Below are positions 13,034 to 14,911 of a DNA stretch of 64,000 bases, in pieces. The notes beneath the pieces were generated by a model. That model made no database searches and was not told where the DNA came from. It was given only the letters and a program-made list of their open reading frames with translations. The translations under genes and the position numbers were made by a program. This DNA comes from Macrostomum lignano (Eukaryota). The first letter of the stretch is position 1; the number at the start of each line of letters is the position of its first letter. The DNA lies in the NCBI GenBank assembly GCA_002269645.1, contig NIVC01002136.1, positions 62,001-126,000 of the forward strand, read 5' to 3'.

Positions 13034-14461
13034 GGACAGACGGACAGACAGACATCCCTAAGCCCCACCTGCAGGCTTCAACATCCGCATCAGGGTCCAT
13101 CCCGTCCAGCTGCAGCACCGCCAGTCGCGAGTCCAGGCCGGGCCCGCCGGCGGCAGCTACGGACGTCTTTGGCCGGCGCAGGCATTGGCAGAGCCGCTGG
13201 GCCTGCTTGGCCAGGTAGGCATCGCTGGAGTGCCTGGCCTTGGCCAGCAGCTCCCGCGCCTGCGACTCGACGCCCGGACAGGCGCGCAGCAGCGGCCGAC
13301 AGGAGTCGTCCCGGCCGAGCGTCAGCAGGATGTCCATCGCTGCGGTGGCTATGTCGCGACGCTCGTTGCTAAGCAACAGTACTAACCCGCCTAGGAGGCT
13401 GGCGTCCTTAGCAACGGACTGGCGCGTCTCCGGCCGGTCGGCCAGCGACTTTAGCGAGCCGAGAGCGCTCGCGTCCTGCAGGATGGTCAGCACACCGTGT
13501 GTCAGAGTCAGTCAGACCCAGTGGGCCTTGTGTAGGGTCAATGTGTCACGTGTCAGAGGATTATACCAGCGGAGCAGTGGAATGTAGAATAGTAGGAGTG
13601 TAGAATAGGAGTGTAGAATATGTGAGCGGTTAGGATCGAGTGATATTGTGGGTGATGTGTCCAAGAATCGGGTGATAGTGTGGGTGATGTGTCCAAGGAT
13701 CGGGTGATATTGTGGGTGATGTGTCCAAGGATCGGGTGATATTGTGGGTGATGTGTCCAAGGATCGGGTGATATTGTGGGTGATGTGTCCAAGGATCGGG
13801 TGATATTGTTGGTGATGTGTCCAAGGATCGGGTGATATTGTGGGTGATGTGTCCAAGAATCGGGTGATATTGTGGGTGATGTGTCCAAGGATCGGGTGAT
13901 ATTGTGGGTGATGTGTCCAAGGATCGGGTGATATTGTGGGTGATGTGTCCAAGAATCGGGTGATATTGTGGGTGATGTGTCCAAGGATCGGGTGATAGTG
14001 TGGGTGATGTGTCCAAGAATCGGGTGACATTGTGGGTGATGTGTTCAAGAATCGGGTGATATTGTGGGTGATGTGTCCAAGGATCGGGTGATATTGTGGG
14101 TGATGTGTCCAAGAATCGGGTGATATTGTGGGTGATGTGTCCAAGGATCGGGTGATAGTGTGGGTGATGTGTCCAAGAATCGGGTGACATTGTGGGTGAT
14201 GTGTCCAAGGATCGTGTGATAGTGTGGGTGATGTGTCCAAGGATCGGGTGCTAGTGTGTGTGATGTGTCCAAAGATCGGGTGATAGTGTGGGTGATGTGT
14301 CCAAGGATCGGGTGCTAGTGTGTGTGATGTTTCCAAAGATCGGGTGATAGTGTGGGTGATGTGTTCAAGGATCGGGTGATATTGTGGTTGATATGTCTAA
14401 GGATCGAATGTGCAATGACCAAGAGTCGAGGAATCTATTGCTTTAAGGTTCTTACTAACAT
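12201..14461 (-). CDS. ARMC1: Armadillo repeat-containing protein 1, 276 aa
   Basis: Exons 14461-14456 (ATG TTA, inferred), 13475-13069 (phase 2) and 12618-12201. ARM region, HMA-like segment (VLQLDGMD...RALVSIRGVISVTF) and C-terminus SWFARAADFLHTSLYW match ARMC1. An in-frame stop at 13514-13512 excludes a start within exon 2. Confidence 0.88.
12925..13053. repeat. (GATA)n(GACA)n compound microsatellite in an ARMC1 intron
   Basis: Direct reading. Confidence 0.95.
13633..14410. repeat. 32-bp minisatellite in ARMC1 intron 1, about 24 copies
   Basis: Unit AAGGATCGGGTGATATTGTGGGTGATGTGTCC. Confidence 0.97.
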
Positions 14462-14911
14462 CTAACAGAATAAATTAACACCAAAAACCATTTTTAAAAT
14501 GGAATAAAAAACTGTTTATTTAATTTGAGCCTATATAAAAATCAGTGACAATTGCTTCATACTGGGAGACACAGTTCGACCCACTCAAGACGCAAAAGCG
14601 TGGACACTGCAGCTGGAAATTCCTGTACTGAAGTAAAAATGTGAGACATACATGGAAGAAGGGTTGAAAATTTTAACAAAATAATAATCAGCAAAGGGTA
14701 GCAAATATATATGTAAGTGGAAGCAGTTATTGAATGAATTAGTGCAACTCACAGCATGATAGGATATAATTAGTTGTGCATGGTAAAAGGTTCAAGTACC
14801 TCAGGTTACAGTCTGTATCTATAAAAAGTATAAAATGTTACTAGCCGACCCTTGGGTATGTGGATTAGTGAGTGATAAGAACTGCAGCATGTCAAGAGTT
14901 ACCAGGCCGAA

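What the first reader, a model, noticed from the sequence alone, without database searches (positions are those of the whole stretch)
14451..14520. Operon-like G-gamma to ARMC1 junction with a 6-nt first coding exon
Seen on the minus strand: AATAAA (14520-14515), then a U-rich tract, then TTAATTTATTCTGTTAG|ATGTTA|GTAAG. The 6-nt exon (14461-14456) splices in phase 0 to 13475, giving M-L-D-A-S-A. It supplies the Met that exon 2 lacks (in-frame stop at 13514). The acceptor lies only ~53 nt after the upstream gene's poly(A) signal, leaving no room for a separate promoter. Established: this spacing is the hallmark of trans-spliced polycistronic units in nematodes, and flatworms trans-splice with a leader ending in AUG. 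Inference: G-gamma and ARMC1 are co-transcribed and resolved by coupled cleavage and SL trans-splicing.
Basis: partly seen in the sequence, partly recalled or inferred. Interest (0 to 1): 0.7.

Follow-up and report, generated by a model that had tools for sequence, protein, structure and literature searches.

The report
Known flatworm operon; six-base exon unproven
The G-gamma and ARMC1 genes are an already annotated, spliced-leader trans-spliced gene pair of the flatworm Macrostomum lignano, and ARMC1's missing start codon most likely comes from the AUG that ends the spliced leader, not from the proposed 6-base exon.

Summary
The window is Macrostomum lignano contig NIVC01002136.1, assembly Mlig_3_7.

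**Already published.** G-gamma and ARMC1 carry the same transcriptional-unit name in the two homeologous copies (g1 and g2). In the window ARMC1 is g2 of its unit, and all three ARMC1 copies are flagged TRANSSPLICED. The M. lignano spliced leader ends in ATG. Operon spacers in this species are known to be inflated by repeats.

**Most likely mechanism.**
- The leader is probably joined directly at CTGCAG|GAC (13476|13475). Its AUG is then in frame and gives M-D-A-S-A.
- The 1039-nt spacer shrinks to about 220-265 nt once the 775-nt minisatellite is removed.
- ARMC1 orthologues commonly begin with MD.

**The 6-nt exon.** It is not needed, and it is absent from the NCBI and UniProt gene models. 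It lies in the least conserved segment of the locus. However, its AG|ATGTTA|GTAAG pattern is only moderately likely by chance, and it is intact in all three gene copies. No RNA reads were reachable, so I cannot exclude it (about 15%).

**Verdict.** Interpretation partly supported; the phenomenon is already known; low interest.

The parts
15209..15214 (-). Trans-splice-type acceptor TTTCAG| in front of the G-gamma 5'UTR; the exon starts at 15208
   Evidence: It matches [T/C]TNCAG. In homeolog L003 the annotated 5'-partial CDS starts at the first full codon after the same acceptor.
14912..15118 (-). G-gamma coding sequence: single exon, 68 aa, CAAX end CELL, stop at 14914-14912
   Evidence: An exact match is on record in GCA_002269645.1.
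14515..14520 (-). AATAAA poly(A) signal of G-gamma. It is the only AATAAA between the G-gamma stop and ARMC1.
   Evidence: It is conserved in both homeologs.
14464..14514 (-). U/GU-rich tract after the poly(A) signal; probably the downstream element and cleavage region
   Evidence: Read. The function is inferred.
14451..14463 (-). Its status is unproven.
   Evidence: It is intact in three homeologs but sits in the least conserved segment, and it is absent from the NCBI and UniProt models.
13632..14406 (-). 32-bp minisatellite of 24 copies filling most of the spacer; it is 288 nt (9 units) shorter in the homeologs
13476..13631 (-). Unique sequence ahead of the ARMC1 acceptor, holding CTGAC branch-point-like motifs (13505-13501 and 13490-13486) and the in-frame TGA at 13514-13512
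   Evidence: The last 100 nt are 98% identical between homeologs, which is exon-like conservation.
13476..13481 (-). Acceptor CTGCAG|, the most likely spliced-leader trans-splice site. Leader ...GCATG|GAC is in frame.
   Evidence: The UniProt model A0A1I8HRC4 starts exactly at DASALGS.
13069..13475 (-). ARMC1 exon A (407 nt). It has no ATG of its own before codon 47.
12619..13068 (-). ARMC1 intron (GTGGGG...CCGCAG) containing simple repeats
   Evidence: The splice reproduces the deposited 263-aa protein exactly.
12201..12618 (-). ARMC1 exon B coding part, ending ...FLHTSLYW and the stop codon
11217..11222 (-). AATAAA poly(A) signal of ARMC1, after a 3'UTR that holds a 58-bp x 9 minisatellite (11512-12046)
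11143..11148 (-). Acceptor TTTCAG| lying 74 nt after the ARMC1 AATAAA and ahead of the F-box/LRR gene, whose own ATG is at 11005
   Evidence: The F-box gene is annotated as a different unit, Mlig020554g1.

Best explanation
This is an ordinary, already annotated two-gene operon of the flatworm Macrostomum lignano.

1. G-gamma and ARMC1 are transcribed as one unit.
2. The G-gamma message is cleaved and polyadenylated shortly after AATAAA (14520-14515).
3. The ARMC1 message is made by trans-splicing the 35-nt spliced leader onto the acceptor CTGCAG|GAC at 13476|13475.
4. Because the leader ends in AUG and the exon begins on a codon boundary, the leader supplies the initiator methionine, and the protein starts M-D-A-S-A-L.
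5. The roughly 1-kb gap between the two genes is a short spacer of about 220-265 nt that has been inflated by a fast-evolving 775-nt minisatellite.

Shown here or in published work: the gene identities, the shared unit name of G-gamma and ARMC1 in the two homeologous copies, the trans-spliced status of ARMC1, the leader sequence, the reading-frame match, the motif match and the spacer arithmetic.

Inferred: that the leader joins at 13475 rather than at 14461, that the leader AUG is the start codon, and that no internal promoter contributes.
For: 1. Source. The window is NIVC01002136.1 of GCA_002269645.1, at window coordinate + 62000.
2. Annotation. The deposited names are ARMC1 = BOX15_Mlig007115g2, with homeolog pairs Mlig002659g1/g2 and Mlig028827g1/g2 for G-gamma/ARMC1. 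The naming scheme cuts one transcriptional unit into several genes using trans-splice and poly(A) signals.
3. Trans-splicing. Mlig007115.g2, Mlig028827.g2 and Mlig002659.g2 are listed as {TRANSSPLICED} and ARMC1-like.
4. Leader. It reads CGGTCTCTTACTGCGAAGACTCAATTTATTGCATG. The trans-splice acceptor motif is [T/C]TNCAG. Operon spacers peak near 100 bp only after repeats are subtracted, and the threshold is 1 kb.
5. Frame. Leader plus exon A translates ...CMDASALGSLKS in frame. Exon A has an upstream in-frame stop and no ATG of its own.
6. Motif. CTGCAG at 13481-13476 fits the motif. It is the only such site after the G-gamma poly(A) signal.
7. Spacer. The 1039-nt gap minus tandem arrays of 775 and 43 nt leaves 221-264 nt.
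8. Conservation between homeologs.
   - The last 100 nt before 13475 are 98% identical.
   - Exons are 98.8-99% and the intron is 94%.
   - The segment holding the microexon is 88.9% with 10 gap columns, the lowest in the locus.
9. Gene models. The UniProt model A0A1I8HRC4 begins exactly at DASALGS. The NCBI models are 5'-partial and begin inside exon A. None has an upstream exon.
10. Orthologues.
   - 14 of 46 ARMC1 orthologues begin with MD, and Patella begins MDANAI against MDASAL here.
   - The M+D form aligns end to end to a profile built from 34 orthologues (138.1 bits, against 137.4 for ML+D).
11. Precedent. Use of the flatworm leader AUG as initiator is established (Cheng et al. 2006, as cited in PMC9851317). 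The final ATG is described as a start codon for Macrostomum leaders (PMC10468722).
Against: - No RNA read, junction or poly(A) tag could be examined here, so the exact leader junction is inferred.
- The AG|ATGTTA|GTAAG pattern is not trivially expected by chance: a few percent up to 28%, and about 0.2-3% with the adjacent AG.
- The pattern is intact in all three gene copies, and the donor is the perfect GTAAGT in two of them.
- Aligners cannot place a 6-nt exon, so its absence from gene models is weak evidence.
- The profile preference for M-D over M-L-D is only 0.7 bit. The two closest mollusc orthologues (Nucella, Dreissena) have two residues ahead of the aligned position, as M-L-D would.
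- The deposited 5' ends of ARMC1 lie 24-33 nt inside exon A and differ between copies with identical sequence. The annotation therefore does not fix the site.
- The published transcript length of 1775 nt for this copy does not fit a start at 13475 together with the AATAAA at 11222.
Confidence: 0.5

Rival explanations
1. The leader is trans-spliced onto TGTTAG|ATGTTA at 14461, only about 35 nt after the G-gamma cleavage site. The 6-nt exon is then cis-spliced from GTAAG (14455) over a 981-nt intron that contains the minisatellite, onto 13475. The protein would start M(M)-L-D-A-S-A.
For: - The pattern is the only phase-0 ATG...GTRAG in the interval and is moderately unlikely by chance.
- AG, ATGTTA and GTAAG are intact in three homeologs, with GTAAGT in two of them.
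- The 53-nt spacing resembles compact operon junctions.
- The leader AUG would also be in frame in this model.
- The N-terminal length would match Nucella and Dreissena ARMC1.
- Current pipelines could not have detected a 6-nt exon placed behind a leader.
Against: - The exon is redundant, because the leader already brings an in-frame AUG to 13475.
- The acceptor TGTTAG (TGCTAG in the homeologs) lacks the published [T/C]TNCAG motif.
- It sits in the least conserved segment of the locus, with a substitution and a 4-nt indel right beside it. An intact 11-mer is expected by chance about 27% of the time at that divergence.
- First exons of 6 nt are very rare (general knowledge).
- No gene model contains it.
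Confidence: 0.15
2. The trans-splice site and leader-supplied AUG are as in the best explanation. However, ARMC1 is mainly transcribed from its own promoter inside the roughly 1-kb spacer or the G-gamma 3'UTR. It would then be a monocistronic outron-bearing gene, or a 'hybrid' operon, rather than depending on read-through from G-gamma.
For: - With the acceptor at 13475 there is about 1 kb between the poly(A) signal and the acceptor.
- The 100 nt before the acceptor are conserved like exons.
- Most trans-spliced M. lignano genes are not in operons: 40% of them are.
- ARMC1 is neoblast-enriched in the published tables, while G-gamma does not appear in those tables.
Against: - G-gamma and ARMC1 carry one unit name in both homeologs where both names could be read, despite the repeat.
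- The pair meets the published operon rule after repeat subtraction.
- Most of the spacer is minisatellite whose copy number varies, which makes it an unlikely promoter.
Confidence: 0.18
3. The GTAAG at 14455 is a real cis donor of a longer conventional exon. That exon would either start in the G-gamma 3'UTR or be a read-through of G-gamma. ATGTTA|GACGCG junctions would then exist in some transcripts without a leader at 14461, alongside leader trans-splicing at 13475.
For: - The donor is consensus.
- In parasitic flatworms, 20-95% of leader acceptors are also used in cis (PMC12582326).
- A junction that jumps the minisatellite would explain why the assembled unit spans G-gamma and ARMC1 in the copies where both names were seen. 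By contrast, the ARMC1 to F-box gap of about 100 nt was not bridged.
Against: - All three ARMC1 copies are flagged as trans-spliced.
- In a read-through message the ATGTTA start would lie far behind the G-gamma ORF and many upstream ATGs.
- No such exon appears in the deposited models.
Confidence: 0.1

Closest known systems
Spliced-leader trans-spliced operons of Macrostomum lignano (Wudarski et al. 2017, PMC5730564; Ustyantsev & Berezikov 2021, PMC8629364)
   Same: - The organism and the locus are the same.
- The genes lie on one strand in one annotated transcriptional unit.
- The downstream gene is flagged as trans-spliced.
- The acceptor fits [T/C]TNCAG.
- The spacer falls under 1 kb, close to the roughly 100-bp mode, once repeats are subtracted.
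- The downstream gene is a conserved, neoblast-enriched gene, which is the class those authors found enriched for trans-splicing.
   Different: Nothing of substance differs. The exact junction for this gene is not stated in the text or tables I could read.
[quoted passage not shown]
   Same: - The leader ends in AUG.
- The acceptor lies on a codon boundary of an ORF that has no AUG of its own.
- The resulting N-terminus (MD...) matches that of orthologues.
   Different: That work was done in Schistosoma and a polyclad. For this gene, use of the leader AUG is inferred and not shown by reads, ribosome footprints or peptides.
Caenorhabditis elegans SL2-type operons, with about 100 nt between AAUAAA and the trans-splice site
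   Same: - Cleavage and polyadenylation of the upstream message are coupled to trans-splicing of the downstream one.
   Different: - M. lignano has one leader and no dedicated SL2.
- Under the best explanation the spacer is about 1 kb and mostly minisatellite.
- The leader brings the start codon, which nematode leaders do not.
Coding microexons of 6 nt or less
   Same: An AG and a consensus GTAAG flank 6 nt that would keep the reading frame.
   Different: - There is no junction evidence and no conservation above background.
- Here it would be the first exon, directly behind a trans-spliced leader. I know of no described example of that arrangement (from memory, not searched exhaustively).

Membership tests
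M. lignano SL trans-spliced operon (criteria of PMC8629364) | Adjacent genes on the same strand with no opposite-strand gene between them | tested here: met
   G-gamma is at 15118-14912 and ARMC1 at 13475-12201, both on the minus strand. No gene is called between them.
M. lignano SL trans-spliced operon (criteria of PMC8629364) | The downstream gene carries the spliced leader (experimental SL reads) | tested here: met
   A published table lists Mlig007115.g2, Mlig028827.g2 and Mlig002659.g2 as {TRANSSPLICED}. I did not see the reads themselves.
M. lignano SL trans-spliced operon (criteria of PMC8629364) | Intergenic distance below 1 kb after subtracting repeats | tested here: met
   From the end of AATAAA to the exon is 1039 nt. 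Subtracting the TRF arrays of 775 nt and 43 nt leaves 221-264 nt. The true poly(A) site was not available.
M. lignano SL trans-spliced operon (criteria of PMC8629364) | Both genes come from one primary transcript | tested here: inconclusive
   G-gamma and ARMC1 share a transcriptional-unit prefix in the two homeologs where both names were readable, under the naming scheme described. The window's own G-gamma name was masked. No polycistronic RNA was examined, and an internal promoter is not excluded.
M. lignano SL trans-spliced operon (criteria of PMC8629364) | Trans-splice acceptor motif [T/C]TNCAG at the junction (present at 44% of sites, so typical rather than obligatory) | tested here: met
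CTGCAG at 13481-13476 fits.
Leader-AUG-initiated ORF (Cheng et al. 2006 type) | The leader ends in AUG | tested here: met
   The published 35-nt leader ends ...TTGCATG.
Leader-AUG-initiated ORF (Cheng et al. 2006 type) | The leader AUG is in frame with the main ORF at the acceptor | tested here: met
   Leader plus exon A translates ...SIYCMDASALGSLKS.
Leader-AUG-initiated ORF (Cheng et al. 2006 type) | No genomic in-frame AUG is available upstream of the conserved domain | tested here: met
   There is an in-frame TGA at 13514-13512 and no ATG before 13475. The first internal Met is residue 47, inside the armadillo region.
Leader-AUG-initiated ORF (Cheng et al. 2006 type) | The leader is actually joined at that acceptor and translation starts at its AUG | not testable with these tools
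   No M. lignano RNA reads, ribosome footprints or peptides were reachable. Two metagenome scans for the junctions found nothing.
   TTAG|ATGTTA|GTAAG ends in phase 0 relative to 13475.
   A scan for ATGTTAGACGCGAGCGCTCTC gave 0 hits in the only collection open to it. That collection is not expected to hold this animal.
   The 11-mer is intact in 3 copies. However, the copies are only 4-11% diverged, so an intact 11-mer is expected about 27% of the time. The surrounding segment is the least conserved of the locus.
   The three NCBI models start inside exon A, and the UniProt model starts at DASALGS. This is weak evidence, since aligners cannot place 6 nt.

The most novel reading that the evidence does not exclude
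The 6-nt exon is real. The spliced leader would be joined about 35 nt downstream of the G-gamma cleavage site onto a 6-nt exon, which is then cis-spliced across a minisatellite-filled 981-nt intron. That would be a trans-splice acceptor exon of only two codons, with a genomic AUG placed directly behind the leader's AUG. It might alternate with direct trans-splicing at 13475.
Probability: 0.15. Interest if true: 0.4.

Novelty: already known. Interest (0 to 1): 0.15.

Why it matters
There is little new biology here.
- M. lignano operons, its single AUG-ending leader and repeat-inflated operon spacers are all published.
- This gene pair is already annotated as g1/g2 of one unit, with ARMC1 flagged as trans-spliced.

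The practical value lies in annotation.
- The deposited ARMC1 proteins are labelled 'partial' and start 8-11 codons too late.
- The complete protein is most likely 275 aa, with its methionine coming from the leader.
- Genes of this kind will always look start-less to pipelines that trim the leader.

If the 6-nt exon turned out to be real, it would be a small curiosity about how short a trans-splice acceptor exon can be.

Tried and rejected
- **First protein search.** A word-index search with exon A alone found nothing. Exact look-up later showed that the proteins are in the collection.
- **Rfam.** A scan of the window gave no hits, and no copy of the leader lies in the window.
- **RNA-level evidence.**
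  - No Logan or transcriptome contig carries the G-gamma or ARMC1 proteins.
  - Two scans of metagenome contigs, for leader+(0-6 nt)+exon A and for ATGTTA+exon A, found nothing.
- **Supplement searches.**
  - The supplements of PMC5730564 have no entry for this locus, and none are held for PMC8629364.
  - The de novo transcripts named for the gene (RNA1509_13442 and RNA1509_44691) are short, 417 and 503 nt, and uninformative.
- **Published transcript lengths**.
  - The 1693 nt for the L003 copy fits a start at the acceptor and a poly(A) site 29 nt after AATAAA.
  - The 1775 nt for the window copy fits neither start.
  - Neither length can resolve a 6-nt difference.
- **Neighbouring gene models.** I tried to sample more M. 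lignano gene models from the rest of the window to estimate how common leader-AUG starts are. The nuclear-receptor and other ORFs are not on record as exact products.
- **Leader-like fragment.** I asked whether the microexon region is a degenerate leader-like sequence. Only an AATTTATT 8-mer is shared, and 8% of random windows score as well.
- **Dispersed repeat.** It is not one, within the sequences held.
- **Other species.** A Logan contig with an ARMC1 homologue (L004) has an ordinary genomic ATG-GAT start and no G-gamma neighbour, so it is not informative.
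Full report
[quoted passage not shown] Record coordinate equals window coordinate plus 62000. This animal is a hidden polyploid. Two further copies of the locus, L002 on NIVC01000056.1 and L003 on NIVC01003231.1, were fetched for comparison.

**The observation.** On the minus strand I confirm every detail.
- AATAAA lies at 14520-14515, followed by a U/GU-rich tract.
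- TTCTGTTAG|ATGTTA|GTAAG places the six bases at 14461-14456.
- 53 nt separate the poly(A) hexamer from 14461.
- The ARMC1 exon starts at 13475 on a codon boundary (cctgcag|GAC GCG AGC GCT).
- An in-frame TGA lies at 13514-13512, with no ATG after it.

The upstream ORF, 15118-14912, is a G-gamma (Pfam PF00631, E = 6e-12).

The downstream gene has two coding exons, 13475-13069 and 12618-12201. They give 274 residues ending FLHTSLYW. An exhaustive HMMER search returns 46 outside relatives. Those I looked up are named armadillo repeat-containing protein 1, from Patella, Dreissena, Dendronephthya, Rhopilema, Sycon and Hippoglossus. The gene identities are therefore right.

**Is the pattern more than chance?** ATGTTA|GTAAG is the only stop-free 'ATG ... 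GT[AG]AG' ending in phase 0 within the 1436 nt between the two coding regions.
- A first-order Markov model gives at least one such pattern in 7.5% of simulations, and 0.2% with an AG directly in front of the ATG.
- Counting the same pattern over both strands of the whole window gives an expectation of 0.33 per 1436 nt, or P of about 28%.
- Scaling from AT-rich bins only gives 3.5%.

The pattern is moderately unusual, but it was chosen after the fact from a large search space.

**What is already published for this locus.**
- Exact look-up shows the deposited protein PAA60577.1, 'BOX15_Mlig007115g2, partial'. It is the ARMC1 of the window, starting inside exon A at 13442.
- The two homeologous loci carry Mlig002659g1 (G-gamma) with g2 (ARMC1), and Mlig028827g1 with g2.
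- Wudarski et al. describe the naming. Assembled 'transcriptional units' often are precursor RNAs with several genes. Their TBONE pipeline cuts them into genes at experimentally mapped trans-splice and poly(A) sites.
- Two unrelated genes sharing one unit prefix on one contig, in both homeologs where both names could be read, therefore means they were assembled as one unit. The window's own G-gamma name was masked by the tool, so its g1 label is inferred from the homeologs and from the consecutive accession numbers.
- In the supplement of Grudniewska et al. 2018, Mlig007115.g2, Mlig028827.g2 and Mlig002659.g2 are each listed as {TRANSSPLICED} and ARMC1-like. They appear in a table of neoblast-related expression.

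Ustyantsev & Berezikov 2021 give the species-level facts.
- The single leader reads CGGTCTCTTACTGCGAAGACTCAATTTATTGCATG.
- The top motif at trans-splice acceptors is [T/C]TNCAG.
- Repeats contribute substantially to operon spacers.
- After subtracting repeats, spacers peak near 100 bp, and 1 kb is used as the operon threshold.

**Where the leader most likely joins.** The leader ends in ATG. Joined to 13475 it reads ...TGC ATG|GAC GCG, which is in frame and gives M-D-A-S-A-L-G-S-L-K.
- The 6-nt exon is therefore not needed to explain the 'missing' Met.
- The flatworm leader AUG is an established initiator (Cheng et al. 2006, summarised in PMC9851317).
- The Macrostomum genome paper calls the final ATG of the leader a translation start codon.
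- CTGCAG at 13481-13476 fits the published motif. It is the only match downstream of the G-gamma poly(A) signal.
- CTGAC branch-point-like motifs lie 12 and 27 nt upstream of 13475.

**The spacer.** From the end of AATAAA to 13475 is 1039 nt. Of this, 775 nt is a 32-bp minisatellite (13632-14406) and 43 nt a smaller array. What remains is 221-264 nt, well inside the published operon class. The array is 288 nt shorter in both homeologs. That is the behaviour the published analysis ascribes to operon spacers.

**Comparison of the three gene copies.**

| Segment | Identity between copies |
|---|---|
| Exons | 98.8-100% |
| ARMC1 intron | 94% |
| G-gamma 3'UTR | 96% |
| Last 100 nt before 13475 | 98% |
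| 14514-14407 (holds the microexon) | 88.9%, plus 10 gap columns; the lowest in the locus |

The 11-mer ATGTTAGTAAG itself is intact in all three copies.
- It has a substitution 4 nt before it, a substitution right after it (GTAAGA here, GTAAGT in the homeologs) and a 4-nt indel 5 nt later.
- At this divergence an intact 11-mer is expected about 27% of the time.
- The comparison is therefore nearly uninformative for the microexon. It mildly favours constraint on the 13475 acceptor region.

**Gene models.** The UniProt model A0A1I8HRC4, from the older assembly, begins exactly at DASALGS, which is 13475. The three NCBI models are 5'-partial and begin 8 or 11 codons inside exon A. None has an upstream exon. 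This is weak evidence, because no aligner can place a 6-nt exon behind a 35-nt leader. The ragged NCBI starts, which differ between copies with identical sequence, also show that the annotation does not fix the junction.

**Orthologue N-termini.**
- Of the 46 outside relatives, 14 begin with MD.
- Patella ARMC1 begins MDANAI, against MDASAL here.
- A profile built from 34 orthologues aligns M+DASA... end to end at 138.1 bits. ML+DASA... scores 137.4 bits and the alignment starts at profile position 3.
- The 0.7-bit difference is small. Nucella and Dreissena have two residues ahead of the aligned position, as M-L-D would.
- The comparison does show that no larger N-terminal exon is missing.

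**Weighing the two models.** A leader-supplied AUG at a motif-matching acceptor is a known and fairly common arrangement in flatworms. A two-codon trans-splice acceptor exon is very rare. Against that prior stand the moderately improbable AG|ATG...|GTAAG pattern and its intactness in three copies. A rough odds calculation combines these with the motif and orthologue evidence. Its priors are my own estimates.

| Reading | Probability |
|---|---|
| Leader joins at 13475, in total | about 0.65-0.7 |
| ... of which co-transcribed with G-gamma | about 0.5 |
| ... of which with an own promoter in the spacer | about 0.18 |
| Cis-only use of the 14455 donor as the main route | about 0.1 |

One observation keeps the donor interesting. 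The assembled unit bridges G-gamma and ARMC1 across a multi-copy minisatellite in the copies where both names were seen. Yet the much shorter ARMC1 to F-box gap was not bridged: F-box is Mlig020554g1, a different unit. A splice junction that jumps the repeat would explain this. I could not test it.

**Verdict.**
The operon and trans-splicing part is already annotated. The 6-nt exon and the 'no room for a promoter' argument are not supported and are not needed.
- The phenomenon and the locus are already known.
- The decisive test is a simple string search of existing M. lignano RNA-seq reads for the alternative junctions.

Noticed in passing
window 15208-15214 (minus); L002 4517-4524; L003 4526-4533: G-gamma itself sits behind a trans-splice-type acceptor (TTTTTCAG|A; TTTTTTAG|A in L002), 90 nt ahead of its ATG. 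The first gene of the unit is therefore probably trans-spliced too. The leader AUG would open only a 7-codon upstream ORF.
   Followed up: partly
window about 15150-15160 (minus), G-gamma 5'UTR: The window has a 1-nt deletion relative to both homeologs (aaaaaacttaagcag against aaaaaacttaaagcag). This explains why the homeolog G-gamma proteins are deposited as 97-98-aa 'partial' ORFs, whereas the window copy is a clean 68-aa ORF.
   Followed up: partly
window 11143-11222 (minus): The ARMC1 poly(A) signal AATAAA (11222-11217) is followed 74 nt later by the acceptor TTTTCAG|CA, ahead of an F-box/LRR gene. This is a compact, textbook operon-type junction. However, the deposited annotation puts the F-box gene in a different transcriptional unit (Mlig020554g1).
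   Followed up: partly
window 7720-13475 (minus); protein P0005: UniProt A0A1I8HRC4 (739 aa) is a chimeric ARMC1 + F-box model. It splices from TACTG|GTAG at the ARMC1 stop codon into the F-box 5' region. This is either a read-through precursor captured as a gene model or a prediction artefact.
   Followed up: no
window 13442 and equivalent positions in L002 and L003: The deposited ARMC1 proteins start 11, 11 and 8 codons inside exon A, although the three copies are identical in sequence there. The published 1775-nt length for this copy also fits no simple pair of ends. The 5' boundary in the annotation is imprecise for this gene.
   Followed up: partly
window 9872-10573, 11512-12046, 12937-13054, 13632-14406 and many further arrays (3600-4200, 27700-30600, 47300-49600, 51100-52800, 58400-59300): The window is packed with minisatellites of 4-58-bp units lying in introns, UTRs and spacers. 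They create long spurious ORFs. Where they could be compared, copy number differs between homeologs (288 nt in the spacer and about 380 nt in the ARMC1 intron).
   Followed up: partly
window 14451-14456 against L002 5289-5294 and L003 5298-5303: The candidate donor is GTAAGA in the window but the perfect consensus GTAAGT in both homeologs.
   Followed up: no
window 24209-25279 (+) and 41365-42498 (-): An actin gene is transcribed divergently from G-gamma, about 9 kb away. A nuclear-receptor ORF is 98% identical to a UniProt M. lignano protein, differing by a glycine-run indel. Neither is related to the finding.
   Followed up: no
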